DNA of 64,000 nucleotides from Ostrea edulis (lineage: Eukaryota). Made by a program: the position numbers and the translations under genes. The notes below the pieces were generated by a model, which saw only the letters and a list, made by a program, of their open reading frames with translations, was not told the DNA's origin and made no database searches. Below are positions 41,510 to 64,000 of the stretch, piece by piece; position 1 is the stretch's first letter; each line of letters opens with the position of its first letter. The DNA lies in contig NC_079166.1 of NCBI RefSeq assembly GCF_947568905.1, positions 13,578,001-13,642,000 on the forward strand, written 5' to 3'.

Positions 41510-41663
41510 TTTGTTTGTCTGCTTTACGTCCCATCGATTATTTTTCACTCATTCTGAGACGTTACCCGTTGTAGGTGAAGTGCTACAATTAGACCTATGC
41601 TTAACGCTCAGGGTCGTAGCAATGAGACTTCTTTAACCAGCCAACGCCTGCCGCGACACGGGA
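41510..41663 (-). mobile_element. SINE 3' fragment (duplicated at about 49273-49428)
   Basis: (TTGT)n tail, TTTACGTCCCATCGA-TTTTTCACTCATT-TGAGACG, ending GACACGGGA like 21382-21627. Confidence 0.6.
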
Positions 41664-44600
41664 CATACTGCGCACATGCAAAGTTATTATTTTATATTCT
41701 ATAGGGCGGTCAGTTTACTACACTGGGTTGTTATCAGATTTCTATAGGCCAATCACGAAGGTTCTACAATTTTTTTTAATATTTGCCTGTTGATCACGAA
41801 GTCTGAGTAAAATGAAATACATGTAGATATGTTTCGAAACATCACGCAGCTGCCTTAACACGTGACACGTTTTTTACATATAAATTCAATGACGATGACA
41901 AAATTACGGACAACCCCATTTTAAAGTTCCATGTACCAGTATAGTGTATATAAGTGATTATTTTATGGCATTTAGCTATACGTTCGTATTTCCTGCCACG
42001 TGACATCCAATTAATTTACAATTTTAATAACGTAAACAAATACGGAAGTAAATACATGTAGATATAGTTTGCATTTGGTCACTATAGACTATGGCTGATT
42101 TTGTGGGTCGTGTGAAGGAAATAGATAATATTACTGACATCTTATGCTCCCCTTCATCTACAAAAAGTGCAGTCATTTTGTATGGAACGAAAGCAGTAGG
42201 CAAATCCTCGGTAGCTCGAGAAGTTTGCAAGAGTATGGAGGATTTGGAAGTACACTGGGTGGACTTAACACATATTGGAGAGGCAATCAAAATTCTTGAA
42301 CCTTTAGTGATCACGATTCTAAACGAAAATCATCTAATTATCGATGAAGAGAACGTCGATGATTTATTTGATGACTTGCTGGAAAGACTATGTTGCAGAC
42401 TTACAGGGCCCGAGAAAAAACACCTCATTGTATTTGACAATATGGATGAGGTATTAGAAAGAAAATTGTCAACGTACATGACAAAGATGATTCATACCCT
42501 TGCTTGTGTTGATGGCGTACGAATCTTGGCTACATCAACGATAAAACTTGAAGTCAAACATCCTTATGTACTGGAAATGGCACTAGAACCATTATCAATC
42601 AAAGACTCTGAAAACCTGCTTCACAAACTTTGCCCCTGTTTGAATCGGAATGAAATGTTTTACAAAGTAATAGACCTGTGTGAAGGGTTACCACTTGTTC
42701 TTAAAATGACAGCGAGTGAAATTGATGCAGGGGAGCTCACCGTGGATGAAATAGTGTGTTTACTGAGTCAGTGTCGACTGAAATTTCTCAGCCAGGAGTT
42801 TTATCCAAGTACAGACCGACTGGGTAAAAAGTTCCCAAAATGCACAGCAAACTGCATTATATGTTAACACGAATGAGTAGAGATATACTATGTTAAAACG
42901 TGTCTATCTTTTGCAGGACCAGTGTATCTCGCTTTTTTACGACGACTCTCAAAACCTCTGCAAGATAAATTGTCCATGATCAATTATATCCCAGGTACCT
43001 TTGATGAAAAGGAAGCTGTAGGAATGATGGGTAAGTTTTATGAATTTTATGGGTAAGCTTTTAGGAATGGAGGGTAAAGTTTTAGGAATGATGGGTAAAC
43101 TTTTAGGAATGATGTGTAAGCCTCCAAATTGTCCTCCATGAAACATTTGTCCAAGTGTCATTAATGTATGTTAAAAATCAGGACGTGAAGACTCCTCCAC
43201 TATTGGGCACCTGGAAGCAGCAATAAAACATCATGTTATTCACAAGTACGGAATTCACAAAAGATTGGACATTCATGGAATTTTACGAGATTGCATATCC
43301 GAGTTCATGGCAATCAAGAACCTACCGTGTATGTACAGTTTGAATGAAGTCGTTCAATGAATCTCAAGTAAATTACTTTTAATTCAGTTATTGAAAAACC
43401 TTAAGCAGATGATGTTCTATAATAATAGCGTTGAGGTGCATATATACTTTCAGTGGTACGTACTAGATTTTGTAAGGTATTTTCTGAGATCCTTCGGGAG
43501 TTGGATGAAAAGTCTCGTACCTCTGACTACCAGGTGGCGCTCTGTCGATTGAATCAGGAGCAGCAGAACTTCAATAAGCTGTTTAAAGATGTCTTCCACT
43601 GCACTAGCGACACCTATCATATTTTTGTCAACATTGCCTCCTATCAATATAACATGTCCACGTCAGCTTTTATGTTTAATTCACCTGATTCATATGGTAA
43701 AATATCCTTATCATATTTCATTTAAGAAACTTTTATTCATTTTTATATCTATTCTACAATTTTTCGTCTTGCCTTCATATTAATATCTACACGCCATGTT
43801 TCTTCTGACAGAAATGGGGATGGTTTTCTACGAAGAATGTTTACGCCTAACTCGAAAACACGGGAATGATTATGACACATCAAAAGTACTTAATGGTTTA
43901 GGACGTGTGGTGACAAATATAAAGGTATATCTTCGTACTCTCTGATATTTCAAATCGCAAGTTTATTTTAGAATTTATCCCACAATCAAAAGTAAGAATA
44001 TGTATTGGTATATACGTGTATTCTGGTTTACTTCATTACAATAAGAAAGGAATATTACGGGGCACGAACGAACTAAACATTTCGACCTATTCCTTTCATC
44101 TGGGATGAAATCAAGTAGTTTACGTTGAATGAGGTGTTGTATTTTGCCATTATAGATACCCGAACGATGTCAGTTTGGAAATATATTTTATTTAATCATT
44201 AGTACATATGTACCTTTAAAATAGGAATATATCTGGTAATTTATAATGAGGAAAGTGAAAACAGTGACATCTCGACCCTCTTACCTTCCCCCAAAAAAGG
44301 AGAGATGTGACAGAAATCTCACAATTATTCTACAAACGTGTCGCTTAATGTTTTGACTGGGGTATATGTAATGCATGTACAGTGCATTAACATCACTTTA
44401 GTGAGTTCTGTGTATATTTTAGATATTCATTGTTGTAATTCATGGACATGTTGAGACAGATTACATTTGTTATTTTCCTGATTAAGCTAAAGATACATTG
44501 TAGGTGTTCAATCAAGAAGGAAATGTTCCTGGTTTTTGATAATCGTTACCAAAATACGTGTTTATATAAAAACAATCTTATTCATACCTTTTCCTGAATG

Positions 44601-45159
44601 AATTTTTAATATTTACTCACTCTTGTATTTTGAGGTTAAATCATATAAAACATAAAAAACCCACGACCAACAAAAAATAATCACATGATTAAAAGATTTA
44701 ACAATTTATTTACTATTATTTACAGAAAAATCCATCAATAAAAAGATATTGACTTACACAAAATAAAGTTTACAAAGCAGTGTCCCTTGTTTGTTCACCG
44801 CTAAGCTGAATTTACACACGGGAATAAGGCTGTTTATAGCACTGTTGAAATCGGCTACAAAGTCGTTCACCAGTAATGTAGTATCCAATGTAATTCTTTA
44901 GAGTGCTTATTACCATACAATGTACTGTCTATAACATAATTCTAGATATGTCTATTTCTAGTAAACAGGTGATACATACCTTTGTATTCAATTTTCACCA
45001 TTCTACAAATAGAATGTCTTTTCCAGAGGCTTATCTAGATTACATGCGTCAATGAATAATATCAAGTACAAATGTATTATACAACAATAGAAACTTCATA
45101 TTCTACACAATACTTTGATAGAATAACTTATCAGCAAAATATATTTTAAGTTGAAATAG

Positions 45160-45641
45160 TAGTGATGAGAATCGGTGATAATTTCATAATCGATGATTGA
45201 TTTACTGTAACTAACTAATTATCGATTATTATCGGACATAGAGAAATTCTATAATACAGTTATTTAACTACAGAAAAAGTGTAAATAAATATTTTCTATG
45301 TTTATATTTGTTGTTTCTATTGCTGAGAGAGTGTAAGTGAATATTTTCTGTTTGTATTTCTTATTCATTTACTATCTTAATATCCTTTAATTACATTTAT
45401 AAAAGTCAATACGATTTTCTCGGGTATGAATACTTTCACTTTCATGTGCGCCGCCATTACAATAAACAAAACTTTTAGGTTAATAAATAGGTCACGGTGG
45501 AATAATTTTCAAATCCTACAGTCCTTGAGAAAACAAAATCTAAACACCGATTAATTGGAATAAAATTTTCATAATCGAGCGCTTAGAATTTGCCAACAAT
45601 CGACTGATTTTCGATTATAATCGATGATTGCAACACCACTA
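45160..45641. mobile_element. hAT-type MITE in intron 5 of copy A
   Basis: Termini TAGTGATG...CACCACTA; perfect 8-bp TSD TGAAATAG (45152-45159 and 45642-45649). Confidence 0.85.
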
Positions 45642-45881
45642 TGAAATAGACAGCTGTATACATTTCCTATGCAGTACTATCATATCGGTAATTAGGACAA
45701 GGGACCTAAATAGGACCGATACTATAAGTCTAATCTTAAAATATATACTTTACATTATTGTTGAACAACATTTAATTTTATATCACTGTTCGTTTTCTTC
45801 ATTTTTTCATCAAACAAATGTTAAAGCAAGTTGTATGTTCAGAAATCGCACTCGTTAAATTCATGACATTACATCATTACA

Positions 45882-46113
45882 TGACTTGTTTCATACCGAT
45901 TGTTAGGCCGTTCTTGGCACACTAATTTTGACTACGGATAACTCCGTTTACTTGATCAAGATAGACGGCTCACGGCGGATGTGACCGGTCGACAAGGGAT
46001 GATTAATCCTCCTAGGCACCTGATCCCACCTCTGGTATATCCAAGGGTCCGTGTTTGCCCAACTATCAATTTTGTATTGCATATAGGAGTTATGAGATTG
46101 ATTACTGTTCATC
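45882..46113 (+). mobile_element. Penelope-like retroelement 3' end (duplicated at 56300-56532)
   Basis: Reverse complement of the 25759-25908 type sequence. Confidence 0.65.
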
Positions 46114-49043
46114 AAAGATGCAAATTGCATCTCTCAATCGTCGATCAAATTTCCTAACACAATTTCATTTTGTTTGTGACATGCTATATAAATACATGTA
46201 TTTAACTTGTCATTGGTACATCAGGAAGATCACGTTCTTGGTGAGCGCCATTACAGGGAAGCCTTACGTATCAGACAGCGACATCACAAACAACAGGACT
46301 ACTTCCTGGCGTTCCTGTATCAGAGCCTGGGTTGGAACCTAGGATGCCAGGGAAAAACACTTGATGCTATATTGTAAGTAATAGAATATAAGTTATTGTA
46401 AGTAAGTGATAGAATATAAGTAATTGTTAGTAATACATTTAAGTGTTTATAAGTTAATAAGATATAAGTAATTGTAAGCTTTAATACTTTTATTTCAATA
46501 AAGATTAAGTGTGAGAAAATTATGTTATGATATCAAATTCGTATGTATCAATTTCATATGATTTTAGGCTATTTCTTTATTTAGTGATACAAGGTGTCGT
46601 TTTCTAAATTTAGACCTAATTGACACGGGTCATGCACTTATTGATCTATTGATAGGTTCCTCGAGAAAGCCCTTAAGATTGAACTGGAACTTGGGATGTA
46701 CACAGAAAATCTAATCTTGAATACACTTCAAACGCTAGCTCTCTTTCATCTGGATTTAGGTATCGTGTAATGAATTGAAATACATATACAAAAAAAACAG
46801 AATGCAAGTCAGAGTAGACTGAAAAAATAGTGCATGATTATGTGAAAATGACATAATCGTTTGAACTGATAATAAATTTGACCAGATTATATCACTTTTA
46901 ATGTTTTTGAAGATCATATAGACGATGGTGAAAAGTACCAAATGGAAGCTTTTCGACGCAGACGACTGGCCATAGGGACAGACATGCACCCAATCATGGG
47001 TTCCATGATGAACAATGTTGGTGAAATGTATGAAAAGAAGGGTGATTTTGAAGAAGCAGAAAGCTATTTTCGACGTGGACTAGAAATAAAAACGCATACG
47101 AACGCTGCAGTGAAAAGTATTGTGTTATCGGAAATAAACTTGGCAAACCTACTGACGGATACCGGACGGGCAGACGACGCCCTGGATGTCCTGCATTGTA
47201 GCATGAATCGGATGGGAAAATTCAGTGGTATCTTTGAAGATACACAATCTCTTGTTCATGAAAGTTTTGGTAGAGCATTTAGGGAAAAAGGAGAAAATAT
47301 AGATCAGCCATGAAATCGTTTCGAGACGCCATTGGCCGTCATGGCGACAGTTGTGCACGTGATTTCGGGGTAATTGGTTTGCAGTGTCGATTGGCGGAGA
47401 GCCTAACATGTCTTCACAAATACAAGGAAGTAATAAATATAATCAAATATTCTTTAAACCAGAAGGATGCTGCAATTAAGCACAATCCGTCATCATTGGT
47501 AGTGCTTCGTTGCTACAAAATCCTCAGAAACGCACAGATTGAATCCGATTGCATCTGGGATGCGCAGGAATCATACAAGAAAGGATATATAGAATTCATA
47601 CGCTTAAAAAACTTATTTGAAAATCTCGATAAGGAAAATTGTCTTTTTAAACTTCAGACTGAATGGGATATTGTACAAACTAATGATGTTTTAGAGAATG
47701 ATACTGTTCATGTACACTCTATGTTCCTATAGCCATAAGAACTGGGGACAGAAAGGACAAATTTTCTGTCACATGCTAGCCAAAACTTTAACCAAGTTGC
47801 ATGAAATACAGCCATCCTGGTACACGCTAGATTGGAACTGGATAATAAATATTATGTTGTTGAGATATTCCACGCAGACTTTAAATGGTCTTATTCTGTC
47901 CCATTTTTATTGACGCCCCTTATCTTCGTATAAAAACCAGCAAGTTATCCTTTTCTTGGCATTCTCATTTCCTTCAGTGATATCATCGTGACTAAAACTA
48001 TTACAAAACCATTTACAGAAGAGTAAAGAAAAGCATTGAACGACCATTTCATGCTATCCATCTGGCAAACAAAGAGCGATAACTGACTTAGAATTAATTG
48101 CACAGAGCTGCGTTATAGCTTTCTAACTTTAAAACATCATTCATAATTCAACGAATTCACAAGTATCCTTCGTGTTTCATTCTTTCTAGACAAAACATTT
48201 TCCAGTTTAAGGTAATACTTAGTAATTTAAAATTTTCATCTCATGAGATGAGAAGTTTGCCTTTGTACACAAAATAACCACTTTGAAGATATCTGATTGC
48301 AAGGTCAGATTTTTGAATGCATTTGTAAAAAAAAAAAAAAAAATCAAGCCAAGTAGAAGTGTGTGGATATAAACACGCGTTTGACATACAGAAGGTTCTA
48401 TTTGAGAACCGGCGTGATCCTGGTAAATGAATTCCCTGGTGAACAATACGTTTTGTGTGTACATGTTGCTATAGTAATGTAAGCTACAACACCCTCAGAT
48501 TCAGTGTTTGCATATTTTGAATTAATTATAGTATAAATACAAGATTCTAGCAAAAGATTTTCTTTATTATCAATCAAAGCAATGTACATACTTCCAAAAT
48601 AAGTATCGCCCCCATACAAGTTTTAGATGTAACAGCATCAGCTTTGCTCACCTCCGATAATCGATCAAAATCTGAGGATAACAGACTTAAGAGTTGTAGT
48701 GACGGAAGAAAGATCCCCGAAAAAAAAAAACTAGATGGGAGAACTTTGTAATCTTTAGAAATGAAAGTACTAAAAATATATCATTTTTATTACGGAATTA
48801 AACCACTCACCTAAAAAATGCGAAACATAAGACATTACACTCGTATTAAAAAAAGTATTCTAGAAAAAAATGCTCTGCATTGTTGAAAAAGCAGATGAGC
48901 ATAGATGTTAACGTGAATAAAACGTTTTAATGTTTCGTTTTGAAGTTCGTTAGTTGTGAAAGATCGATTAAAGGCTTCAGAGTTTCGGGTTTTGTAAATT
49001 CCATATCAAAGACGTAATAAAAGTCACTAAAACCGACACATTC

Positions 49044-49287
49044 TTAAACTATGGGAAGTTTAGAATATACAGAAGTAGTGTTGTCATTCCGATACCACAC
49101 GGCCGATTGCTTTGTCTGTCTGCTTAAACTATATGGGAAGTTTAGAATATACAGAAGTAGTGTTGTCATTCCGATACCACACGGCCGATTGCTTTGTCTG
49201 TCTGCTTAAACTATATGGGAAGTTTAGAATATACAGAAGTAGTGTTGTCATTCCGATACCACACGGCCGATTGCTTTGTTTGTCTGC
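49044..49287. repeat. 80-82 bp unit triplicated in duplication unit 2 (single in unit 1, about 41444-41523)
   Basis: TTAAACT anchors at 49044, 49124 and 49206. Confidence 0.92.
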
Positions 49288-49983
49288 TTTACGTCCCGTC
49301 GATTATTTTTCACTCATTCTGAGACGTCACCCGTTGTAGGTGAAGTACTACAATTAGACCTATGCTTAGCGCTCAGGGTCGTAGCAATGAGACTTCTTCA
49401 ACCAGCCAACGCCTGCCGCGACACGAGACATACTGCGCACATGCAAAGTTATTATTTTATATTCTATAGGGCGGCCAGTTTACTACCCTGGGTTGTTATC
49501 AGATTCCTATAGGCCAATCACGAAGGTTGTACACATTTTTTATGTGTGTCTGTTGATCACGAAGTCTGAGTAAAATGAACTACATGTAGATATTTTTCGA
49601 AACCTCATGCAGCTGCCTTACCACGTGACACGGTTTTTACATATAAATTCAATGACGGTGACGAAATTACGGACAATCCCGTTTTAAAGTTCCATATACT
49701 AGTGTATATAAATGATTATTTTATGACATTTAGCCATACGTTCGTATTTCATGCCACGTGACATCCAATTAATTTACATTTTAGATTTTGGTGCAACTTC
49801 ATAAGAGTCATGAGAAATTGATCACTGGTATAAACCCTTGTACCGCCCATCCTAGAACTTGTTAAAATTGGCACATTCTCTTCATACCAGCCACCAGCAC
49901 ATTGATACTCCTGAAGGACATGATGTATATAACAGCATCTGTAACAAGCATAGACATCAAGGTGAATATCATTTAAAGTATTG

Positions 49984-50166
49984 TAGGGGTGGATCAAGAA
50001 AATTTGCAACGGGGGGGGGGGGGGGGGGCAAGTGTAATTTATACTATCCCCCTAAAAGAGGTATGGTGTAAATTAAAATGATCAAAATTGCAACCCAAAT
50101 CCCCATATTTGTTACATATGAACTACCAAATGGGGGATGGCACCACCCCCTCTTGTCCCACCACTG
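49984..50166. mobile_element. Degenerate short MITE related to 34231-34411
   Basis: TAGGGGTGGATCAAGAA...CCCACCACTG with a G-tract interior. Confidence 0.4.
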
Positions 50167-51030
50167 CATTCTTAAACAGTAAATAAACATCTTGTATCGA
50201 AAGAAGAATTCAAACGCCACAATCTAAATTGAATTAATTTAAGATCTGAATGTATGAATGAATGTTTACTATTTCTTTGTTGCCACAAGAGGCATAGTAT
50301 TTTACAAATACATAGACACAGAAATGAAGTACATGTGTATCAAAAACTTTTGCTAGGTCCCGTATTATGTAAATATTGTAAAAACATGTTATTTCAGTTA
50401 TCCCAATCGTGTTTGAAATTTTTTGTTTCCAAATTGGTAGCATTTTCCGTGAGGGTCACAATAAAAACATAAGCAATATCATTATTAATTAAAACATAAT
50501 GAAAATGAGAAACTGCATTGCCTTGTAAATGTGTCCCCCTAGCTATCAGCATCCCATAAAAATGTGTTATTACAAGTATTAATTAGGGAGATGGACAAAA
50601 CATGGTACAAATAGATACCTGCATATATTTACTTTATCCAGCCAATTGTTTTATTCCCCCGTCCCTTTTGCATTCATTTTGTCTCCTTAATCAAAAGTAC
50701 CATACTGCATAATTGTGTCATGTAATGCTAGTTCTAACTCATAAAAAACTAAACTCTTCAACTTGACAGCTGTTTATTATCGAACATATTAAGTAAAATA
50801 TGTTTTAAATCAATCACCCGGTCGTGGGTAAAACTCACTGCTTCCGAGTTCTCAATCGGCGATTTAAATATAAGTATTATGACTTGTTTACCTGCATCTA
50901 TAAATCCACTTCTTCCTCTTTTTACATAAGTAGGGAATCTACATAGGATGTAGGTTTATTTTAACGCTGTCATCTGAGCATAACCAAAGCATAACAAAGT
51001 GACATTTTTCGATTGCTGCCTGGAAGTATT

Positions 51031-51061
51031 AAATCGAAAGTGAAAGTAAACGAGACTTTCC
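51031..51061 (+). promoter_or_regulatory. IRF-binding element plus kB-like site upstream of copy B
   Basis: AAATCGAAAGTGAAAGT (51031-51047) fits the IRF/ISRE consensus. GAGACTTTCC (51052-51061) is one mismatch from canonical GGGACTTTCC. Confidence 0.45.
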
Positions 51062-51137
51062 GACCCTATTTTAATCGCGTAAACAAATACGGAAGTAAAT
51101 ACATGTAGATATAGTTTGCATTTGGCCACTATAGACT

Positions 51138-54100
51138 ATGGTTGATTTTGTGGGTCGTGTGAAGGAGATAGATAATATTACTGACATCTTATGCTCCCCT
51201 TCATCTACAAAAAGTGCCGTCATTTTGTATGGAATGAAAGCAGTAGGCAAATCCTCGGTAGCTCGAGAAGTTTGCAAGAGTATCGAGGATTTGGAAGTAC
51301 ACTGGGTGGACTTAACACATATTGGAGAGGCAATCAAAATTCTTGAACCTTTAGTGATCACGATTCTAAACGAAAATCATCTAATTATCGATGAAGAGAA
51401 CGTCGATGATTTATTTGATGACTTGCTGGAAAGACTATGTTGCAGACTTACAGGGCCCGAGAAAAAACACCTCATTGTATTTGACAATATGGATGACGTA
51501 TTAGAAAGAAAATTGTCAACGTACATGACAAAGATGATTCATACCCTTGCTTGTGTTGATGGCGTACGAATCTTGGCTACATCAACGATAAAACTTGAAA
51601 TCAATCATCCTTATGTACTGGAAATGGTACTAGAACCATTATCAATCAAAGACTCTCAAAACCTGCTTCATAAACTTTGCCCCTTCTTGAAACGGAATGA
51701 AATGTTTTACAAAGTAATAGACCTGTGTGAAGGGTTACCACTTGTTCTTAAAATGACAGCGAGTGAAATTGATGCAGGGGAGCTCACCGTGGATGAAATA
51801 GTGTGTTTACTGAGTCAGTGTCGACTGAAATTTCTCAGCCAGGAGTTTTATCCAAGTACAGACAGATTAGGTAAAAAGTTATCCAAAAGCGCAGCAAACT
51901 GCACTATATGTTAACACGAATGAGTAGAGAGATACTATGTTAACACAAACGAGTAGAGATGTACTATGTTAAAATGGGTGTATCTTTTGCAGGACCAGTG
52001 TATCTCGCTTTTTTACGACGACTCTCAAAACCTCTGCAAGATAAATTGTCCATGATCAATTATATCCCAGGTACCTTTGATGAAAAGGAAGCTGTAGGAA
52101 TGATGGGTAAGTTTTATGAATTTTATGGGTAAGCTTTTAGGAATGGTGGGTAAAGTTTTAGAAATGTTGGGTAAATTTTTAGGAATGATCGATACGTTTT
52201 AGGAATGATGGGTAAACTTTTAGGAATGATGTGTAAGCTTCCAAATTGTCCACCATGAAACACAAGATATTTTACATTTGTCCAAGTGTCATTAATGTAT
52301 CTTAAAAATCAGGACGTGAAGACTCCTCCACTACTGGGCACCTGGAAGCAGCAATAAAACATCATGTTATTCACAAGTACGGAATTCACAAAAGATTGGA
52401 CATTCATGGAATTTTACGAGATTGCATATCCGAGTTCATGACAATCAAGAACCTACCATGTATGTACAGCTTGAATGAAGTCGTTCAATGAATCTCAAGT
52501 AAATTACTTTTAATTCAGTTATTGAAAAACCTTAAGCAGATGATGTTCTATAATAATAGCGTTGAGGTGCATATATACTTTCAGTGGTACGTACTAGATT
52601 TTGTAAGGTATTTTCTGAGATCCTTCGGGAGTTGGATGAAAAGTCTCGTACCTCTGACTACCAGGTGGCGCTCTGTCGATTGAATCAGGAGCAGCAGAAC
52701 TTCAATAAGCTGTTTAAAGATGTCTTCCACTGCACTAGCGACACCTATCACATTTTTGTCAACATTGCCTCCTATCAATATAACATGTCCACGTCAGCTT
52801 TTATGTTTAATTCACCTGATTCATATGGTAAAATATCCTTATCATATTTCATTTAAGAAACTTTTATTCATTTTTATATCTATTCTACAATTTTCCGTCT
52901 TGCCTTCATATTAATATCTACACACCATGTTTCTTCTGACAGAAATGGGGATGGTTTTCTACGAAGAATGTTTACGCCTAACTCGAAAACACGGGAATGA
53001 TTATGACACATCAAAAGTACTTAATGGTTTAGGACGTGTGGTGACAAATATAAAGGTATATCTTCGTATTCTCTGATATTTCAAATTGCAAGTTTATTTT
53101 AGAATTCATCCCACAATCAAAAGTAAGAATATGTATTGGTATATACGTGTATTCTGGTTTACTTCATTATAATAAGAAAGGAATATTACGGGACACGAAC
53201 GAACTAAAAATTTCGACCTATTCCTTTCATCTGGGATGAAATCAATTAGTTTACGTTGAATGAGGTGTTGTATTTTGCCATTATAGATACCTGAACGATG
53301 TCAGTTTGGAAATATATTTTATTTAATCATTAGTACATATGTACCTTTAAAATAGGAATATATCTGGTAATTTATAATGAGGAAAGTGAAAACAGTGACA
53401 TCTCGACCCTCTTACCTTCCCAAAAAAAAGGAGAGATGTGACAGAAATCTCACAATTATTCTACAAACATGTCGCTTAATGTTTTGACTGGGGTATATGT
53501 AATGCATGTACAGTGCATTAACATCACTTTAGTGAGTTGTGTATATTTTAGCCATTTATTGTTGTAATTCATGGACATGTTGAGCCAAATTACATTTGTT
53601 ATTTCCCTGATTAAACTAAAGATACATTGCACGTGTTCAATCAAGAAGGAAATGTTGCTGGTTTTTGATAATTGTTACCAAAATACGTGTTTATATAAAA
53701 AAATCTTATTCATACTTTTCCTGAATGAATTTTTAATATTTACTCACTCTTGTATTTTGAGGTTAAATCATATTAAACATAAAAAACCCACGACCAGCAA
53801 AAAACAATCACATGATTAAAAGATTTAACAATTTATTTACTATTATTTACAGAAAAATATATCAATAAAAAGATATTGACTTACACAAAATAAAGATCAC
53901 AAAGCAGTGTCCCTTGTTTGTTCACCGCTAAGCTGAATTTACACACGAGAATAAGGCTGTTTATAGCACCGTTGAAATCGGCCGCAAAATCGTTCACCAG
54001 TAATGTAATATCCAATGTAATTCTTTAGAGTGCTTATTACCATAAAATTACTGTCTATAACATAACGTACCTTTGTATTGAACTTTCACCATTCTACAAA

Positions 54101-54968
54101 TAGAATGTCTTTTCCAGAGGCTTATCTAGATTACATGCGTCAATGAATAACATCAAGTACAAATGTATTATACAACAATAGAAACTTCATATTCTACACA
54201 ATACTTTGATAGAATAACTTATCAGCAAAATATATTTTAAGTTGAAATAGTAGTGATGAGAATTGGTGAGAATTTCATAATCGATGATTGATTTACTGTA
54301 ACTAACTAATCATCGATTATTATCGGACATAGAGAAATTCTATAATACAAGTCATTTAAGGTAGGTAAATACTATTAGAAATTTCTGTCAATCAAATATT
54401 TTTTTCATTTAAATAACTTTAACAACTCATAAACTAACTAAAAAGCCCATATAAGACATACCTTTGCAGGTTTATTTTTATACTATGTGCTACAGAGCAC
54501 ATATACCCCCAAACGTAAAAGCCAAATTCTAACACAAGAATGCCTTATCTCATGTTTTATTAAAAATATGCACCAAAGCACATCATATTAAGCTATAATA
54601 TATAAAAACCAATAGGTATTCATTTACTGAGATAATTTTTAAAGATATTCAATTGAAAACATACATAATTGCTGTTTAATCTGCTCACATCTTTCAGAAA
54701 AAAATCACAGAATATTGCAATTTTGAAAAATTCTCAAAATCTAAATGGTTTACATGCCAGTTTTTTTTAAAAAAATATTTAGAATTATATCTAAGGTTAA
54801 CAAAAAACATATTTTACCATAGTTGACCAGAGATATTTTGCAAAATGGTCTCTTGAATATGTAAACCCCCATTTTTAAATTTAAGTTTTACAATTATTCT
54901 TTGCACACTTTGAAAATAGTAAATTGTAACAGCAAATACAGTCTTAAAATCAAGATTAACAGAATATG

Positions 54969-55016
<48 letters not shown>

Positions 55017-58000
55017 ACTGAAAATTTTGTCCTACCAGACAATTAGAACACAAGGAGTGGGGGGGGGGGTGCACCCCACCCCTTCCTTTTTCTCACAATT
55101 GTTTTGGTGTGTGTGTTATTCTTTTTTTGTTTGTCCATCAATCATATATTACATAAAAATACATACATGCTATCTCATACTTATAGAAAAAATAAATATA
55201 GTGTAACATATGTGTAGATTCTAGCAACTACAGCTCATGTACAAATAATTTTGTTTCTTGAAAGTACTTGTGAAGAACAGTTCAAATATTCAACAACTTT
55301 GCTGATGATTTTCTGAGGATTTATAATTCTTGGTTTCTTTGAACCAAACACACTCCCTAAAATTCAGTTTGAATTCCACTGTGAGGATCACTCCTATGTA
55401 TGATTTTTAACTTGTTCAGGCTTAGATTGCAAGCTATGAGCCGTTTAAGCCTATGAGCCTTTCAATGTAGATATTACATTGCTTTGTAACATTGGAGCTA
55501 GTGAGGACTTCACACTATAATAATTCATGGTAAATATATCTAAGATTCACATTTGAATGCTAAATGTGACTCGTACATACAGTTCTCGTAAACTACAAAC
55601 ATCAAACAAAAAAGTTATAACTGGAACTTTCTAGTCGGTGTTTAAAATTTAAAACCGGATACGTAAAAGCACGGACTTTCCTAAACTAGTGAACAAATGT
55701 AAATAAATATTATCTATGTTTATATTTGTTGTTTCTATTGCTGAGAGAGTGTAAATGAATATTTTCTGTTTATATTTCTTATTCATTTACTATCTTAATA
55801 TCCTTTAATTACAGTTATAAAAGTCAATACGATTTTATCGGGTATGAATACTTTCACTTTCATGCGCGCCGCCATTACAATAAACAAAACTTTTAGGTTA
55901 ATAAATCGGTGACGGAGGAATATTCTTCAAATCCTACAGTCCTTGAGAAAACAAAATCTAAACACCGATTAACTGGAATAAAATTTTCATAATCGAGCGC
56001 TTAGAATTTGCCAACAATCGACTGATTTTCGATTATAATCGATGATTGCAACACCACTATGAAATAGACAGCTGTATACATTTCCTATGCAGTACTATCA
56101 TATCGGTAATTAGGACAAGGAACCTAAAAAGGACCCATAATATAAGTCTAATCTTAAAATATATACTTTACATTATCGTTGAACAACATTTAAATTTATA
56201 TCACTGTTCGTTTTCTTCATTTTTTCATCAAACAAATTGTAAAGCAAGTTGTATGTTCAGAAATCGCACTCGTTAAATTCATGACATTACATCATTACAT
56301 GACTTGTTTCATACCAATTGTTAGGCCGTTCTTGGCACACTAATTTTGACTACGGATAACTCCGTTTCCTTGATCAAGATAGACGGCTCACGACGGGTGT
56401 GACCGGTCGACAAGGGATGATTACTCCCCCCTAAGCACCTGATCCCACCTATGGTATATCCAAGGGTCCGTGTTTGCCCAACTATCAATTTTGTATTGCT
56501 TATAGGAGTGATGAGATTGATTACTGTTCATCAAAGATGCAAATTGCATCTCTCAATCGTCGATCAAATTTCCTAACACAATTTCATTTTGTTTCTGACA
56601 TGCTATATAAATACATGTATTTAACTTGTCATTGGTACATCAGGGAGACCACGTTCTTGGTGAGCGCCATTACAGGGAAGCCTTACGTATCAGACAGCGA
56701 CATCACAAACAACAGGACTACTTCCTGGCGTTCCTGTATCAGAGCCTGGGTTGGAACCTAGGATGCCAGGGGAAAACACTTGATGCTATATTGTAAGTAA
56801 TAGAATAAAAGTTATTGTAAGTAAGTGATAGAATATAAGTAATTGTAAGCAATATATTTTAGTGTTTATAAGTTAATAAGATATAAGTAATTGTAAGCTT
56901 TAATACTTTTATTTCAATAAAGATTAAGTGTGAGAAAATTATGTCATATTATCAAATTCGTATGTATCAATTTCATATGATTTTAGGCTATTTCTTTATT
57001 TAGTGATACAAGGTGTCGTTTTCTAAATTTAGACCTAATTGACACGGGTCATGCACTTGTTGATCTATTGATAGGTTCCTCGAGAAAGCCCTTAAGATTG
57101 AACTGGAACTTGGGATGTACACAGAAAATCTAATCTTGAATACACTTCAGACGCTAGCTCTCTTTCATCTGGATTTAGGTATCGTGTAATGAATTGAAAT
57201 ACATATACAAAAAACAGAATGCAAGTCAGAGTAGACTGAAAAAATAGTGCATGATTATGTGAAAATGACATAATCGTTTGAACTGATAATAAATTTGACC
57301 AGATTATATCACTTTTAATGTTTTTGAAGATCATATAGACGATGGTGAAAAGTACCAAATGGAAGCTTTTCGACGCAGACGACTGGCCATAGGGACAGAC
57401 ATGCACCCAATCATGGGTTCCATGATGAACAATGTTGGTGAAATGTATGAAAAGAAGGGTGATTTTGAAGAAGCAGAAAGCTATTTTCGACGTGGACTAG
57501 AAATAAAAACGCATACGAACGCTGCAGTGAAAAGTATAGTGTTATCGGAAATAAACTTGGCAAACCTACTGACGGATACCGGACGGGCAGACGACGCCCT
57601 GGATGTCCTGCATTGTAGCATGAATCGGATGGGAAAATTCAGTGGTATCTTTGAAGATACACAATCTCTTGTTCATGAAAGTTTTGGTAGAGCATTTAGG
57701 GAAAAAGGAAAATATAGATTAGCCATGAAATCTTTTCGAGACGCCATTGGCCGTCATGGCGACAGTTGTGCACGTGATTTCGGGGTAATTGGTCTGCAGT
57801 GTCGATTGGCGGAGAGCCTAACATGTCTTCACAAATACAAAGAAGTAATAAATGTAATCAAATATTCTTTAAACCAGAAGGATGCTGCAATTAAGCACAA
57901 TCCGTCATCATTGGTAGTGCTTCGTTGTTACAAAATCCTCAGAAACGCACAGATTGAATCCGACTGCATCTGGGATGCGCGAGAATCATACAAGAAAGGA

Positions 58001-58147
58001 TATATAGAATTCATACGCTTAAAAAACTTATTTGAAAATCTCGATAACGAGAATTGTCTTTTTAAACTTCAGACTGAATGGGATATTGTACAAGCTAATG
58101 ATGTTTTAGAGAATGATATTGTTCATGTACACTCTATGTTCCTATAG
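51138..58147 (+). CDS. NB-ARC/STAND ATPase with winged helix and C-terminal TPR array (NLR-like), copy B, intact, 806 aa
   Basis: Exons 51138-51870, 51993-52106, 52313-52459, 52585-52827, 52943-53055, 56644-56792, 57075-57178 and 57330-58147 total 2421 nt = 807 codons with no internal stop. Motifs: Walker A GMKAVGKS, Walker B IVFDNMDD, GLPL, DIHGILR, and TPRs such as HPIMGSMMNNVGEMYEKKGDFEEAESYFRRGLEI. Confidence 0.9.
54251..56059. mobile_element. The same hAT MITE in copy B, interrupted by a nested insertion
   Basis: TSD TGAAATAG at 54243-54250 and 56060-56067. Confidence 0.8.
54360..55681. mobile_element. Nested 1.32-kb insertion at a TTAA site (Kolobok-like), contains (TA)n at 54972-55010
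   Basis: Absent from copy A, which has a single TTAA. Flanked by TTAA (54356-54359) and TAAA (55682-55685). TIRs are weak. Confidence 0.55.
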
Positions 58148-58426
58148 CCATAAGAACTGGGGACAGAAACGACAAATTTTCTGTCAAATGCTAGGCAAAA
58201 CTTGAACCAAGTTAATTCCCAATGGTTGATCTTTTGCGTTTAAGCCACGAATAATGCATGTATGAAAACAAGCGTTTTTTTGCAAGTTCTATATGTTTCT
58301 TATGTCGTTTTGATGTCATGAATTACATCATTGCTCTTAGAGTGTTGCAATTAAAACCAGGAAGACATTTTCCAACAGCTATTTGACATTTTAACTGCAT
58401 GCACGCACGATAATCATCAATCTCCA

Positions 58427-58625
58427 TCGTGGATTTCCCATATTTGTACAGCAATATTTCAATATCACTCGCAGATGGTTTTTATGCCTCTCAGCTGATT
58501 CGATACGCAAGAGCTTGTGCGTATGACCAGTTTTTAAATCGAGGCAGGCTACTGACAAATATATTGATGTTACAGGTATTTGAACAGTCTCGTTTAAAGT
58601 CAGCCTTTCGCCAGTTCAATGGCCG
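58427..58625 (+). mobile_element. Penelope-like retroelement ORF fragment (C-terminal to RT)
   Basis: IVDFPYLYSNISISLADGFYASQLIRYARACAYDQFLNRGRLLTNILMLQVFEQSRLKSAFRQFNGR. Confidence 0.7.
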
Positions 58626-58799
58626 TACACTGTTGCTCGAGAACTAGCACTACGACCCTACTTTTTTCGTTTTGATTTCATAATTCTCTGTCCATGTATA
58701 AATCAATGATATACTTCCAAAAATGACAATACTACAAAACTTAGGAGCGAATCTCTATAATTGGTACTTTGGTATTGTTTCAAATAAAAAGAGATACAG

Positions 58800-59130
58800 T
58801 ATTCAAAATGTAGTAGTTTCAATCTTGCTTCAACATAAAAAAGTTCAACTTTGAAGAAATGTTGCATTTTGAACATTGAAAAAATAGTCCTGATTTTCAA
58901 TTTTGTTTCAACGTAGAAAAACTGCTGTAATAGCAACGGAAAATTATGTTGCATCTTCAACGTTGTTTCAGCGTTGAAAAGTTTCTTAAAGCAAAGTCAA
59001 CGTTGAAACTATAATGTTGGATCAACATGAAACTGACTGGTTGTTCGCTATTTCAACCATGATTCAATGTATTCTCATAGTTGAGATATGTTTTGTATCA
59101 AAGCTCTTTATTGCACATAGGTAACATTTG
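58800..59130. repeat. Repeat-rich segment with recurring TTCAAC/GTTGAA palindromic motifs, probable decayed MITE
   Basis: Multiple CAACGTTG-type motifs; termini not resolved. Confidence 0.35.
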
Positions 59131-59589
59131 GAAAGGAAACCCAATTGCTTCACACCATAGAAACGTAGAATATTCAATCATCGGTTCAGCGATGAACAAC
59201 ATAGCTCTAAGGTACAAAACCTTTAAAATGTTTTTAAACATTTCTAAACGGAGTTGAGATTAATCTAAGAATTAAAACCATTACATAAAATCTAAATAAA
59301 ATAGGGAATCCCGAAAAAGCCAGCCAGAACCTTTTGGAGAATAGTTTTTGGATATTTTGAAAATATACCCGATTTCCTCCTAAGATTTGAACCCTGTTTT
59401 ATGTCACACGTTTGAGGATATTAAGATGTGAGAATCACAGAATGAAAAGTGATAAATTTTAGAAGGGGGATTTCAGCCTTTGATCTTGATATGTAAGCAT
59501 CGGCATGTTGAATTCAAAGATTGATTAATACATGATTTGCAGGTAATGTTGTATAATGAAAATGAGTAAAACTAAATATGTCGGCTTAT

Positions 59590-59885
59590 TCAGCATTTCC
59601 TTTCCTTTATGCCTATCGCTCTTCTCGAAGCATAGGCCGTCGAAAAGAGTCCGCCAAATCCTCGGTCCTGGACTGCCCTCTCCAGCTGTTTCCAGGCGTG
59701 CCCATCTTCTTGACGTCTGCCTCAAGGTCGCGCCACCAGGTGTTTCTTGGCCGTCCTCTCTTCCGTTGTTACTGGAGATTCCACGAGAGAACGTCCGTCT
59801 GGTGATGTTATTGGCTGGTTTCCTCAGGGTGTGCCCAATCTATCCACATTTTCTCATTAAGCTTTTACTGTCTTACAAGTCATTT
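59590..59885 (-). mobile_element. 3' end of an RTE-clade LINE ORF, frameshifted
   Basis: The minus strand reads IGHTLRKPANNITRR..WNLQ*QRKRGRPRNTWWRDLEADVKKMG..WKQLERAVQDRG..RTLFDGLC, the typical RTE C-terminus. Confidence 0.8.
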
Positions 59886-60684
59886 CAGTAATAGCGAGGA
59901 GTCACAGGCTAAGATGACGAGGGACAATCCTCTAATTTTTGTACCAAAGGAATGTGTCGGTATAAAATTCGATTTACCGAATATCTTCAGTTTCTTTTCG
60001 GTGGTGACGGGTTTTATTTATTTTCCAGATATCGTAGATAATTTTTAAAAAGAAATTTAAGTTAGAAAAATATGTAATCGTACTGTCCACCTCAGTTTCT
60101 GTAAATCTGAACTCCTCCGTTGTAGACAATTTTCGCGGTTTTTACCAGTTCACTCTTTCTTTACCGAATTCCCTGCGGTGTTTTGACAGCTGATACAACG
60201 TGCAACCCATATTTATAGATGTCAGCTACCTACCTGTATGGCCTATTATCTGTCACCCAGCTCCTTTCCAATACATTTCATTTGTCGACTATCTTTCACG
60301 ATGTTTGATATTATCATAGGAAACTATTTCAGTAGTTTTCATAATACACAGAGTTTTGTCAAATATAAAATTTTAATTTTTCGAAATGTTTGACAGGTAA
60401 TCGATACTTCCATGGGCCTTGCCGCTTCAGTTATCAATGATACAAAGATGAAAAATAGGTAATTTGAGATGATTATTTTGTGGCGCTTTGAAATAAATAA
60501 TCGTTATCAGTATGTACTCAGTTTTATTTTCATATAACTGTTAAGTGGCATACCCTTGAATGAAGTTCGAGCAAAATAAATATTACGAATACTTAACTTC
60601 TCTCACATGAAGTACATACCGATAAGATTTTATCAGTTTGAATAAAACCGGAAACACCGCAGTTTTCCTTGCTGTGTTGCTACA

Positions 60685-63600
60685 ATGGCCAATTTTATAG
60701 GTCGAAAATCTGAATTAACAGATTTGACAGCAAAACTCGGACAATGTGATATAGTTGTCGTTCATGGATTGAAAGGCGTTGGAAAATCATCTTTAGCAAG
60801 AGAATACTGTAAGCACATCGAACGACCTTACTTTTGGATTGACCTCCGAAACATCACTGATTCTGATGAAATTCTGCAGTCGCTTGTCAGACATTTTATA
60901 CAGGAGGCAATCGGAGTTGATGACCCTAGAGAATTGCTAAGTGTCGTATGTGAAAATATTGTAAGAAGGAGACTCGATTTAGTCATTATATTTGACAACG
61001 CAGAGGATATATTTAAAACCGAAGAGGATATTTTGTGTGTAGACATTTTACTTTCACTTTCACAATTGAAAAATACTAAGGTGTTGGTGACATCAACCAC
61101 CAGGTTTCCCACGAAAACTATTGATTGTGAGGAGTTTTTATTGAAGGAACTGTCTTTTCAGGATTCCTTTGATCTATTAAAGAGTATCTGTCCAAATCTG
61201 AAGGACACAGAAAAAATAGCAAAGATTGTTGAGCTTTGTGAAGGTCTTCCTCTGGCATTGCTTCTGACCGGTGGGGAAATAGAGGACAACTCACTGAGTG
61301 TAGACGAAATTATATATCTACTTAGTCACCACAGACTTAAGATATTGAGTTCTGAATGCTACACACAAGATGAGCAAATCGGTATGTTTATCTATAGGCA
61401 GAGAGATTAAAGGTATTCAATGTATAACGAAAAGATAATGACCAATTTTGAAGAATTTAAATCAACGTAAATGATTATTGCTTATTAATGATGAAAGTGA
61501 AGTAGGTGAAAATGATTAGAAGCCGATCATTTTGCAGTTGAGACCATTTTTAAAGAGTAATCTGCCCTTTGTAAAAATAAAAATCTATTTTTTCTAAACA
61601 TTTGTGTGGTAAATGATTAATTCAATTTAATGTATTCATAAAGATAAAGTGTATGTAATTTTTCACAAAGAGATCTGAATGAAAATTTAATTTCTTTGAA
61701 AAATATTTTAATAAAACACGCTCTTCCCATTGAATTTATTGTTAAATTCTAAGTGAAATAAATCAAGCAGTAAACAAAATTTTGAAAATTACCATAGTGG
61801 ATTATTTTTATTTGATGAACCCTTCAAATGATACCATGGTTACAAACATTTCACCATCCATTTACTAGATAAGACATATGGTCAATATACATTGAATACC
61901 TTAAAACATTAAGACAATAGATAAGTAACTTGTGTCTAGATTGTACTTTGGCAGTTTGTTTACCATGCCTGATTCAAAGTGTCATGATTCATTCTAAAGC
62001 ATATTTAAAATAAATGTGAGATTATGCATGTCTGACGGAAATGATCTTAAATGCTTTATTCTAATTTTAGAACCCATTTATAAAGGCTTCTTGGACAGAC
62101 TTCCCAAAGATTTGGAAGAAAAATTAACAATTGTGAATTACATTCCAGGCACATTTGATTTAGAAGAGGCGGTGGATATATTGGGTAATGGGTGACTATT
62201 GCATTATCTTATTTTGTTGTAAACAATAATATTTTCATTTGTTTATTTGCATATTAAACCCAAATAAGTCAAGCAAAGTCAGTGATTAAGTCTTAAATTT
62301 TGAAATTTTTAGGGTCTGGTGAAGACGAGTCACATGACACACTGCAGACATTTTTACATCGTCATTTGATTACACAAGTTTCAGACAAAAGATTCGATAT
62401 CCATGGAATTTTGAGAGATTGCATGAAGGAATATTTGAAAATCAAAGATATCAAAGGTACGTAAGGGTGTTTAGGAAATTCCTGGCAAACATTTTTGTCA
62501 TGAGTAGGACTAGTGGAAACGGCAGTATGATTCTGTATATTACGATTAAATGAAATATTCATTGATCGACGAAAACTCGTTAGGAGAGGGGATTCTTATG
62601 AACAATTCTCAAACTCGAAAATAAGTTGGTTGCAAGTACATCTTTCATTACCTTAAGTTATAAAAATCATAATGTTGATCCGAGGATTCAAACTTTTATA
62701 CAGTAAGATGAAAGACGAAGATAACAAACAGTGATCAATCTCATAACTCCTATAAGCAATACAAAATAGAGATTTGGGCAGAGATGGACCCCTGGACGCA
62801 CCAGAGCATGCACATTTAATGCCATCCAATAAAAAGCACTGAAATTGAGAAACACAATTACTCAATAGATGTTGATGGCTAATTCTAGTAAGAATTTTAT
62901 CTAACTTGCACACAAGTAATGGCAAAGTACTCAAAAACACAGGCGACCGCCGACTTCAAACATGGATTCCGAAGTAAATTAAATTGTAAAACAAACTGTT
63001 CAGCTCACTCTATGCATTAATGTAACAACGGATAATACTTATAAAGGATTAAGTTCTGACTTCAAAATAGATAACAAAACAGATTAAAATCAGAATCACC
63101 GAGTATATGTATTTAAATATAACAAAATATCCAAATAACAATGAAAATGAGTTATTACTACTACGACAATGTTTGTCTGATACAGTTGACAAGAAGGTTT
63201 AGTTATACATATTTTCTGTAAATATAGAATTGCGAAATGCTGATTTTAATAAACGAGATTGTTGGAACCCCTGTATCATCAACATCAACTTCTTTGTCAG
63301 TAGCCTGCTTCGATTTAAAATCTGACCATTCGCAGAACAAGCTCTTGCGTATCGAATCAGATTAGAGATGTAAACACCATATGCAGGTGATAATGTAATA
63401 TTGCTACATGAATATGGGAAGTTGACGATGGAGAAGTTGAAATCATCCCGTTTGTCATAGATGTTTACTTATAATTACAGAGTGACATAAAAAGCGATAC
63501 CGTGCATTTAGTAAATATGTCGGAAATGTATGGTAATTTTTGTCGTGGTTTGAAATGTTTTGGGGATTTTCATGAAAGGTGAAGATAAGGAATAGTGCTC

Positions 63601-64000
63601 AATCTCATAATCCCATAAGCAATACAAAATAGAAAGTTGGGCAAACATGGACCCCTGGACACACCAGATGTGGGAGCAGTTGCCTAGAAGTAGTAAGCAT
63701 CCCCTGTCATCCATTGCAATGATGATTAATATGTATGGAAAGTCTGGTGCTTTCATTTTTCGCACACTTTCTCCATCCACCTTAACAAAATCAAGTATTT
63801 CCAACGCGCCAAAATCCTCCGATACACTTTATGTAAATCTGTTTTTTGAGGTTCAAAATGTGCAAGGATGTGATGCTTGGCGATATGATAGATCAGTATA
63901 ACAAAATCCTTTAATTTGTAGGTGTTCGGGCGCGCTTCTGCAAAACTTTTTCAGACATTCTAAAGGAGATAGAGAAGAGGACACACACAAGAGATTACAC
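60685..64000 (+). CDS. NB-ARC/STAND ATPase gene, copy C (older paralog), 3' end outside the window
   Basis: Exons 60685-61381, 62071-62184, 62313-62456 and 63922->64000 have the same intron positions and phases as copies A/B. Motifs: FIGR, Walker A GLKGVGKS, Walker B IIFDNAED, CEGLPLAL, NYIPGTFD, DIHGILRDC, VRARFCK. Confidence 0.88.
63290..63470 (-). mobile_element. Penelope-like retroelement ORF fragment in intron 3 of copy C
   Basis: YDKRDDFNFSIVNFPYSCSNITLSPAYGVYISNLIRYARACSANGQILNRSRLLTKKL. Further 3'-end pieces lie at 62708-62805 and 63577-63710. Confidence 0.72.

What the first reader, a model, noticed from the sequence alone, without database searches (positions are those of the whole stretch)
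42091..64000. Tandem array of effector-less NB-ARC-TPR (NLR-like) genes
Seen: three spliced paralogs whose first coding exon starts 3 residues before the FVGR/FIGR motif and holds Walker A, Walker B and GLPL. A winged-helix-like exon (DIHGILR) follows, then in A/B roughly 7-8 long (about 42 aa) TPRs. Known: NB-ARC plus TPR is an immune-receptor architecture in fungal NLRs, plant TNPs and bacterial Avs, which normally carry an N-terminal death, TIR or enzymatic effector; the best-known animal NLRs are NACHT-LRR. Inference: this is a lineage-expanded molluscan sensor family that has no effector and must signal in trans through a helper or adaptor, or by oligomerisation alone.
Basis: partly seen in the sequence, partly recalled or inferred. 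Interest (0 to 1): 0.82.

Follow-up and report, generated by a model that had tools for sequence, protein, structure and literature searches.

The report
Oyster NB-ARC–TPR genes without N-terminal effector
A flat-oyster chromosome carries a tandem cluster of five NLR-like switch proteins (NB-ARC ATPase plus TPR repeats) that lack the usual N-terminal signalling domain, and three of them end in a membrane-anchor-like tail, so any signal must leave the protein some other way.

Summary
The window (Ostrea edulis, chromosome-scale contig) contains three spliced NB-ARC–TPR genes. These are A (42091-47313), B (51138-58147, 806 aa) and C (60685 onward, cut by the window end). Two more copies, D and E, lie just beyond the window.

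The missing N-terminal effector is supported three ways:
- A spliced RNA contig reads straight through the suspected TAG|ACT acceptor, so an in-frame stop sits two codons before the ATG.
- The RefSeq models for A and C start at the same ATGs.
- 24 mollusc homologues (bivalves and gastropods) all begin 2-14 residues before the FxGR motif.

On a tree, this mollusc clade sits next to DED-bearing chiton and crinoid relatives.

Three corrections or additions:
- A carries a 2-bp insertion that truncates it to 667 aa.
- The cluster holds two old types: soluble A/B, and C/D/E. All oyster orthologues of C/D/E end in a 21-residue hydrophobic, non-amphipathic segment plus a basic tail, which looks like a tail anchor.
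- The type-1-then-type-2 gene order is also found in Magallana gigas.

Pairwise dN/dS is 0.26-0.39, so there is no sign of an arms race, and an immune role remains untested. I rate this a new variant of a known kind. The scan had not reported the family on other DNA.

The parts
42091..47313 (+). Gene A (RefSeq LOC130053246, type 1, soluble). It has 8 coding exons: 42091-42823, 42917-43030, 43182-43328, 43454-43696, 43812-43924, 46225-46373, 46656-46759, 46913-47313. The product is 667 aa, truncated.
   Evidence: The model reproduces P0164 exactly. Exon 1 matches NB-ARC. An A-type spliced RNA contig shows the gene is transcribed.
42078..42090 (+). Transcribed leader of A. It contains the in-frame TAG (42085-42087) and the unused AG acceptor.
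   Evidence: RNA contig X1 record 4 reaches the homologous B position 51125 and carries A-type letters. An Illumina adapter lies directly upstream.
47289..47732 (+). Site of the 2-bp (GA) insertion in A's last exon, followed by the out-of-frame remnant of the C-terminal TPR region (ORF 47310-47732).
   Evidence: A/B DNA alignment and ORF list.
51138..58147 (+). Gene B (type 1, soluble, intact, 806 aa). It has 8 coding exons: 51138-51870, 51993-52106, 52313-52459, 52585-52827, 52943-53055, 56644-56792, 57075-57178, 57330-58147.
   Evidence: Spliced model with GT-AG introns and an open frame. Pfam NB-ARC in exon 1 and TPR_12/TPR_10 in the last exon. Junctions 1-4 match the RNA contig.
60685..64000 (+). 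Gene C (RefSeq LOC130046267, type 2, 823 aa), 5' part only. Exons in the window are 60685-61381, 62071-62184, 62313-62456 and 63922 to the window end. The gene continues to 3410 bases past the window end, where it encodes the tail-anchor-like C-terminus.
   Evidence: The model reproduces P0157 exactly. NB-ARC scores 47.9 bits. The hydrophobic tail is shown.

Best explanation
This is a conserved two-type tandem cluster of mollusc-specific STAND ATPases. The domain order is NBD, HD1, winged helix, helical arm, then about 9 TPR hairpins of roughly 42 aa. The proteins begin directly at the nucleotide-binding module.

**Shown:**
- The architecture.
- The true start codon of the A-type transcript.
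- The same start in the homologues' gene models across molluscs.
- Conserved Walker A Gly/Lys, Walker B Asp, GLPL, and an MHD-like His (DIHGILRD).
- Purifying selection.
- Two anciently split types kept side by side in Ostrea and Magallana.
- A tail-anchor-like C-terminus in type 2 (C, D, E).

**Inferred mechanism:**
- As in other NB-ARC/STAND switches, the TPR arm holds an ADP-bound closed monomer.
- Binding of a ligand to the TPRs allows nucleotide exchange and ring-like oligomerisation through the NOD.
- With no death-fold, TIR or enzymatic head, output must come from induced proximity.
- For type 2, that would mean clustering on the cytosolic face of an organelle membrane, where the C-terminal helix anchors it. 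The moderate hydrophobicity and basic flank suggest mitochondrial outer membrane or ER.
- For soluble type 1, it would mean recruiting a partner or co-assembling with type 2.
- A role in innate immunity or cell death is the most likely context, but it rests on analogy only.
For: - **NB-ARC identity:** NB-ARC is above Pfam cut-off in all five copies.
- **Structure model:** The AlphaFold model of C has pLDDT 89.5 and pTM 0.80, with NBD 1-155, HD1 158-221, WHD 232-311, arm 317-383, 9 hairpins 394-783, a disordered linker 789-796 and a terminal helix 796-822.
- **Fold matches:** Foldseek's best hits are the PH0952 STAND-TPR protein and then NRC, ZAR1, CED-4 and Apaf-1. These align over about 350 residues at about 4 A. 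A PDB sequence profile search hits NRC4, PH0952 and NRC3.
- **Start codon:** RNA read-through of the candidate acceptor, RefSeq starts and N-termini in 24 homologues.
- **Motif conservation:**
- **Tree:** A 29-row mollusc clade (SH-aLRT 97) has no real N-terminal domain and lies next to DED-bearing chiton and crinoid proteins.
- **Tail:** All nine type-2 tails have Kyte-Doolittle 2.05-2.6, Eisenberg mean hydrophobicity 0.60-0.79 and hydrophobic moment 0.04-0.21, followed by 3-7 residues of net charge +1 to +3. Type 1 has none of this.
- **Gene order:** The same order (789-aa type 1, then 825- and 819-aa type 2) occurs in M. gigas.
- **Selection:** dN/dS 0.26-0.39.
Against: - No expression-under-challenge, localisation or biochemical data exist.
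- RNA support for the 5' end comes from one contig of one run, and it is A-type only. The starts of B, C, D and E rest on gene models and conservation.
- The second Walker B acid is Asn in 19 of 24 family members, and the sensor-1 Arg is not conserved. ATP hydrolysis may therefore be weak or absent.
- Gene-wide dN/dS below 0.4 and the low copy number are not typical of fast-evolving immune receptors.
- The membrane tail is predicted from hydrophobicity scales and an AlphaFold helix only. It carries a conserved Lys/Arg mid-segment.
Confidence: 0.6

Rival explanations
1. These are housekeeping or structural STAND scaffolds. They would be conserved organelle- or cytoskeleton-associated regulators (as the label 'nephrocystin-3-like' on the Mercenaria homologue hints), not pathogen sensors.
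For: - Both types are old and kept in the same order in Ostrea and Magallana.
- dN/dS is 0.26-0.39 in both the NBD and TPR exons.
- Only about 5 copies were found.
- A membrane anchor suits a fixed cellular location.
- The Walker B and sensor-1 deviations suggest a slow switch.
Against: - The Pfam NPHP3_N and TPR_NPHP3 matches are far below cut-off.
- Recent tandem duplication (A/B 94-96% identical, C/D/E 93-96%) and a frameshifted copy fit birth-and-death turnover.
- The nearest relatives carry death-effector or HEPN heads, which are typical of immunity and cell-death proteins.
Confidence: 0.28
2. An N-terminal effector exists but is encoded by unannotated upstream exons.
For: An AG lies in phase just before the ATG in A and B, and AGs lie within 22 nt of the ATG in C, D and E. 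Only one RNA contig was examined.
Against: - The RNA contig reads through the AG and includes the in-frame TAG.
- RefSeq models start at the same ATG.
- All 24 aligned homologues from many species start within 14 residues of FxGR.
- In a distant paralogue elsewhere in this genome, the N-terminal domain sits in the same exon as the FIGR motif, not in a separate one.
Confidence: 0.04
3. The array is decaying: these are expressed pseudogenes left after loss of a DED-bearing ancestor.
For: Copy A is frameshifted. B has a 1.28-kb repeat inserted about 70 bp upstream of its ATG and 1.3 kb inserted in an intron.
Against: B, C, D and E keep complete open frames. dN/dS is well below 1. Orthologues are intact across molluscs. 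The catalytic-site Gly/Lys residues are invariant.
Confidence: 0.03

Closest known systems
Metazoan death-fold NB-ARC–TPR 'NLR-like / Apaf-1-like' proteins (amphioxus, crinoid and chiton DED–NB-ARC–TPR; placozoan and Hydra NB-ARC–TPR; PMC6321704, PMC10959488)
   Same: They share the NB-ARC core and the 42-aa TPR arm. They are the nearest neighbours on the NB-ARC tree.
   Different: Those proteins carry an N-terminal DED, CARD or Death-like domain. The mollusc clade starts at the NBD, and oyster type 2 adds a C-terminal hydrophobic anchor.
PH0952 / MalT-type STAND ATPases with a TPR sensor (PDB 6mfv; PMC6468293)
   Same: PH0952 is the best structural and second-best sequence match. It has the same NOD–arm–TPR layout, so the same autoinhibition logic is likely.
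   Different: [quoted passage not shown] It is also prokaryotic.
Plant NB-ARC NLRs (NRC, ZAR1) and Apaf-1/CED-4
   Same: The NBD-HD1-WHD superposes at about 4 A over about 350 residues. The GLPL and MHD-like motifs are shared.
   Different: The sensor is TPR rather than LRR or WD40, and there is no CC, TIR or CARD head. Walker B reads D-N instead of D-D. APAF-1 itself is reported absent from molluscs (PMC11463336).
Bacterial Avs (STAND–TPR antiphage sensors, PDB 8dgc)
   Same: A STAND NTPase plus a TPR sensor that binds a ligand and oligomerises. Foldseek E-value 9e-9.
   Different: Avs proteins carry N-terminal nuclease or other effectors and are much larger. The global TM-score is low.

Membership tests
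NB-ARC (AP-ATPase) clade of STAND NTPases | Pfam PF00931 above the gathering score | tested here: met
   28.3, 34.9 and 47.9 bits for A, B and C against 23.5. D and E score 47.9 and 53.3.
NB-ARC (AP-ATPase) clade of STAND NTPases | NBD-HD1-WHD fold superposing on solved NB-ARC proteins | tested here: met
   Foldseek aligns NRC3, NRC4, ZAR1 and CED-4 at rmsd 3.7-4.7 A over 345-367 columns, probability 1.00.
NB-ARC (AP-ATPase) clade of STAND NTPases | Walker A GK[ST], Walker B hhhhDD, sensor-1 Arg, GLPL, MHD His | tested here: inconclusive
   Walker A is invariant and GLPL is conserved. Walker B Asp is present in 22/24, but the next residue is Asn in 19/24. The sensor-1 position is K/E/R. The MHD-like His is present in 17/24.
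Canonical tripartite NLR (effector–NOD–repeat) | N-terminal effector domain (death-fold, TIR, CC, enzymatic) | tested here: not met
   The protein starts 3 residues before FxGR. This is backed by RNA read-through of the acceptor with an in-frame stop, no Pfam domain, and the same start in 24 homologues.
Apaf-1 / CED-4 apoptosome proteins | N-terminal CARD, and WD40 repeats in Apaf-1 | tested here: not met
   There is no CARD, and the repeats are TPR_10/TPR_12.
Nephrocystin-3 (NPHP3) | Pfam NPHP3_N and TPR_NPHP3 above cut-off | tested here: not met
   NPHP3_N scores 14-19.7 bits against 24.8. TPR_NPHP3 scores 18-50 bits against 100.
Tail-anchored membrane proteins (type 2 only: C, D, E) | A single hydrophobic, non-amphipathic segment of about 20 aa within about 30 residues of the C-terminus, with a short polar/basic tail and no signal peptide | tested here: met
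   Kyte-Doolittle 2.05-2.6, Eisenberg mean hydrophobicity 0.60-0.79, hydrophobic moment 0.04-0.21, and 3-7 residues after the segment with net charge +1 to +3. This holds in 9 of 9 type-2 proteins from 5 oyster species.
Tail-anchored membrane proteins (type 2 only: C, D, E) | Actual membrane insertion and localisation | not testable with these tools
   This needs microscopy or fractionation.

The most novel reading that the evidence does not exclude
Oyster type-2 proteins (C, D, E) are tail-anchored, resistosome-like NB-ARC switches on an organelle surface, most plausibly the mitochondrial outer membrane. On activation, ring assembly bundles 6-8 transmembrane helices, each carrying a conserved mid-membrane Lys/Arg. 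This bundle perturbs or permeabilises the membrane. The adjacent soluble type-1 genes (A, B) act as co-assembling sensors. Together they would form a sensor/executor NLR pair giving a cell-death or immune output in a phylum that has lost Apaf-1.
Probability: 0.1. Interest if true: 0.85.

Novelty: new variant of a known kind. Interest (0 to 1): 0.52.

Why it matters
NB-ARC–TPR proteins with death-fold heads are known from cnidarians, placozoans and amphioxus. Molluscs, however, are usually described as poor in NLRs and as lacking Apaf-1.

This work defines a mollusc-wide NB-ARC–TPR clade that has shed the N-terminal head. It also shows that oysters keep a soluble type and a tail-anchored type side by side.

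That gives a concrete and cheap system for two questions: how a headless STAND ATPase signals, and whether membrane tethering can stand in for an effector domain. The genes are also candidates in a commercially important host of Bonamia and OsHV-1. All members are currently annotated only as 'uncharacterized protein'.

Tried and rejected
1. I first took runs X3, X4 and X6 for RNA because of their small listed size. Laying them showed continuous coverage of introns, so they are DNA and say nothing about expression.
2. I first read the DNA joint 49778->51068 as an insertion polymorphism of copy B. The contig carries copy-A letters at the diagnostic sites I could check, so it is copy A laid on B. 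I rejected the polymorphism reading.
3. A whole-genome PF00931 search hit only the five array genes. I do not use this as a census, because a multi-exon NB-ARC gene at C3:44.867 Mb was missed.
4. I considered PH0952 as a natural 'effector-less' precedent. The paper shows its N-terminal DNA-binding domain was removed for crystallography, so I rejected it.
5. K1PPD3 of M. gigas appeared to have a 330-aa N-terminal extension. It is a chimeric model: the TPR end of one copy fused to the NB-ARC of the next.
6. The look-up of encoding contigs returned nothing for the O. edulis and S. cucullata proteins.
7. Literature searches for the LOC and UniProt identifiers, for 'NB-ARC + tail-anchored', and for NB-ARC/TPR in bivalves found no description of this family.
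8. A scallop 'nephrocystin-3-like' survival-associated SNP (PMC11829576) could not be tied to this family, so it is not used as evidence.
9. I did not run complex prediction, because no binding claim is made beyond speculation.
Full report
**What is in the sequence**

On the + strand, three long first-exon ORFs begin MADFVGR (42091), MVDFVGR (51138) and MANFIGR (60685). Each passes Pfam's NB-ARC gathering score and also matches AAA_16 and related STAND models. Each ends at a G|GTA donor in phase 1.

A search of the window's own genome (895 Mb, 52 contigs; the window is C3:13578001-13642000) found two further copies 9 and 26 kb beyond the window end. I fetched and read these. A/B are 94-96% identical. 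C/D/E are 93-96% identical to each other. The two groups are only 38% identical.

The genome is Ostrea edulis. RefSeq proteins LOC130046267 (823 aa) and LOC130053246 (667 aa) lie on a contig of the same length as C3. My spliced models of C and A reproduce them exactly.

**Gene models**

A has the same structure, but carries a 2-bp insertion in the last exon relative to B. The frame ends at 47313, and the rest of the TPR region survives out of frame to 47732. RefSeq annotates this truncated 667-aa product.

C is cut by the window end inside exon 4. D and E cover all 823 query residues in tblastn.

The A/B duplication unit is 40430-47798 against 48023-58213. Two segments are specific to B: 49784-51067 and 54359-55684.

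**Is there a hidden N-terminal exon?**

I laid four public runs on 47700-53699.

- Three runs proved to be DNA.
- The fourth (X1) gave one 2466-nt spliced contig covering 51127-51866 | 51992-52105 | 52312-52457 | 52585-52826 | 52942-53056 and onward.
- That contig continues unspliced through the TAG|ACT acceptor. Its last 23 letters are Illumina adapter, abutting position 51125.
- At all six listed variant positions, and at the exon-1 end, the contig carries copy-A letters. It is therefore the transcript of A or an A-like allele, with its 5' end 13 nt before the ATG.
- The in-frame TAG two codons upstream is therefore part of the mRNA.

Independent evidence agrees:

- RefSeq models of A and C start at these ATGs.
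- In an alignment of 24 homologues from oysters, scallops, pearl oyster, Solemya, Mercenaria, Mya, Potamilus and two gastropods, every protein starts 2-14 residues before FxGR.
- In a profile search of 1.84 billion representatives, the 24 best full-length hits all have the NB-ARC starting at residue 29 or earlier. The one exception, M. gigas K1PPD3, is a chimera of two tandem copies.

**Architecture**

An AlphaFold2 model of C, built on the 24-sequence alignment, is confident (pLDDT 89.5, pTM 0.80). It shows:

| Element | Residues |
|---|---|
| NBD | 1-155 |
| HD1 | 158-221 |
| Winged helix | 232-311 |
| Helical arm | 317-383 |
| Nine TPR-like hairpins | 394-783 |
| Low-confidence linker | 789-796 |
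| Final helix | 796-822 |

Foldseek ranks the archaeal STAND-TPR protein PH0952 first. After it come the NRC and ZAR1 resistosomes, Avs3, Apaf-1 and CED-4. The NOD superposes on these at about 4 A over about 350 residues. The PDB sequence profile search agrees.

Across the family:
- Walker A Gly/Lys are invariant.
- Walker B Asp is present in 22/24, but is followed by Asn in 19/24.
- The sensor-1 Arg is not conserved.
- GLPL is conserved.
- The His of DIHGILRD, the MHD-equivalent position by inference, is present in 17/24.

C, D and E end in a 21-residue hydrophobic segment followed by a short basic tail. The same is true of every oyster orthologue of this type: Saccostrea cucullata, S. echinata (two genes), Magallana gigas (two genes) and Crassostrea virginica.

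| Measure | Value in all nine tails |
|---|---|
| Kyte-Doolittle | 2.05-2.6 |
| Eisenberg mean hydrophobicity | 0.60-0.79 |
| Hydrophobic moment | 0.04-0.21 |
| Residues after the segment | 3-7 |
| Net charge after the segment | +1 to +3 |

A Lys/Arg is conserved mid-segment. This is the signature of a tail-anchored membrane protein, not an amphipathic TPR cap. A/B and their orthologues lack it, and Pfam sees no domain there. STAND effectors can lie at either end of the protein (PMC6468293), so 'effector-less' holds for the N-terminus only.

**Evolution**

A maximum-likelihood tree of 86 NB-ARC regions (quick search, SH-aLRT support) recovers a 29-row clade with support 97. Of its rows, 27 have no N-terminal extension. 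The other two are the chimera and a Potamilus model with an 82-aa extension that matches no domain. The members I could name are bivalves and gastropods, plus a cephalopod cluster.

Its neighbours are a chiton protein with a weak DED match and a crinoid DED–NB-ARC–TPR. Amphioxus DED forms and Lingula HEPN forms lie further out. Loss of a death-fold head in the mollusc lineage is therefore a reasonable reading. The tree is unrooted, however, so the direction of change is inferred.

Inside the oyster subclade (support 98), type 1 (A/B) and type 2 (C/D/E) each have orthologues in other oyster genera. Their split therefore predates those genera.

In M. gigas the same order is found on one strand: a 789-aa type 1, then 825- and 819-aa type 2.

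Pairwise Nei-Gojobori dN/dS is 0.27-0.39 in exon 1 and 0.26-0.33 in the last exon. That indicates purifying selection, with no gene-wide sign of diversifying selection.

**Context**

APAF-1 is reported absent from molluscs and annelids (PMC11463336; PMC10959488). NB-ARC–TPR proteins with CARD or death-like heads are described in placozoans and Hydra (PMC6321704). I found no paper describing this mollusc family or a tail-anchored NB-ARC protein. All database names are 'uncharacterized protein' or, once, 'nephrocystin-3-like'. The NPHP3 Pfam models are not met.

**Reading**

The architecture and the absence of an N-terminal head are well supported. The mechanism is inferred from established STAND biology: a TPR-gated nucleotide switch that oligomerises, with type 2 acting on a membrane surface. 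The immune role is analogy only. The main rival is a conserved non-immune scaffold function, which the low dN/dS and the stable two-type synteny favour.

Noticed in passing
window 49784-51067: The 1.28-kb segment present only upstream of copy B, ending about 70 bp before its ATG, has a word depth of roughly 5,000-20,000 in DNA run X3. Flanking sequence sits at about 135. It is therefore a high-copy repeat or transposable element. The IRF-like and kB-like sites noted in s1-307064 lie inside this repeat. Copy A, the one seen transcribed, lacks it.
   Followed up: partly
window 49100-49500 (and homologous 41338-41574): Another very high-depth repeat (up to about 50,000 in X3) lies upstream of both A and B. 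Similar short ORFs occur at 41338-41574 and 49112-49339.
   Followed up: no
window 54359-55684: A 1.3-kb insertion specific to copy B lies inside intron 5. It includes an (AT)n-rich / TATA-repeat stretch.
   Followed up: no
window 37719-38469: A minisatellite of about 750 bp with an 18-bp unit. It reads as the MIYSYS... pseudo-ORFs on the minus strand.
   Followed up: no
L006:2420-2872 and L006:4031-4177 (G000:C3:44865420-44867177): A distant multi-exon NB-ARC gene in the same chromosome. One exon ends with EEFIGRE after about 110 residues of an unassigned N-terminal domain. The next exon carries a canonical GMGGMGKT P-loop. The whole-genome PF00931 search missed this gene.
   Followed up: partly
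L010:1-20463 (Magallana gigas OY970753.1:1128622-1153219): The syntenic cluster in the Pacific oyster: a 789-aa soluble type 1, followed by two tail-anchored type-2 genes (825 and 819 aa) on the same strand, then an EGF-repeat gene on the other strand.
   Followed up: yes
35.8-36.5 kb past the window end (L004:5830-6531): A weak TPR-only tblastn match (31% to the Saccostrea protein) lies downstream of copy E. It may be a further fragment or an unrelated TPR gene.
   Followed up: no
profile-search hits P0057, P0080, P0097, P0100, P0112, P0121, P0146 (C-terminal) and P0060, P0095, P0104, P0119, P0127, P0133 (N-terminal): Many more distant NB-ARC–TPR relatives of unknown taxa also carry strongly hydrophobic segments near one end. 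Membrane tethering may be a recurrent theme in this STAND group.
   Followed up: no
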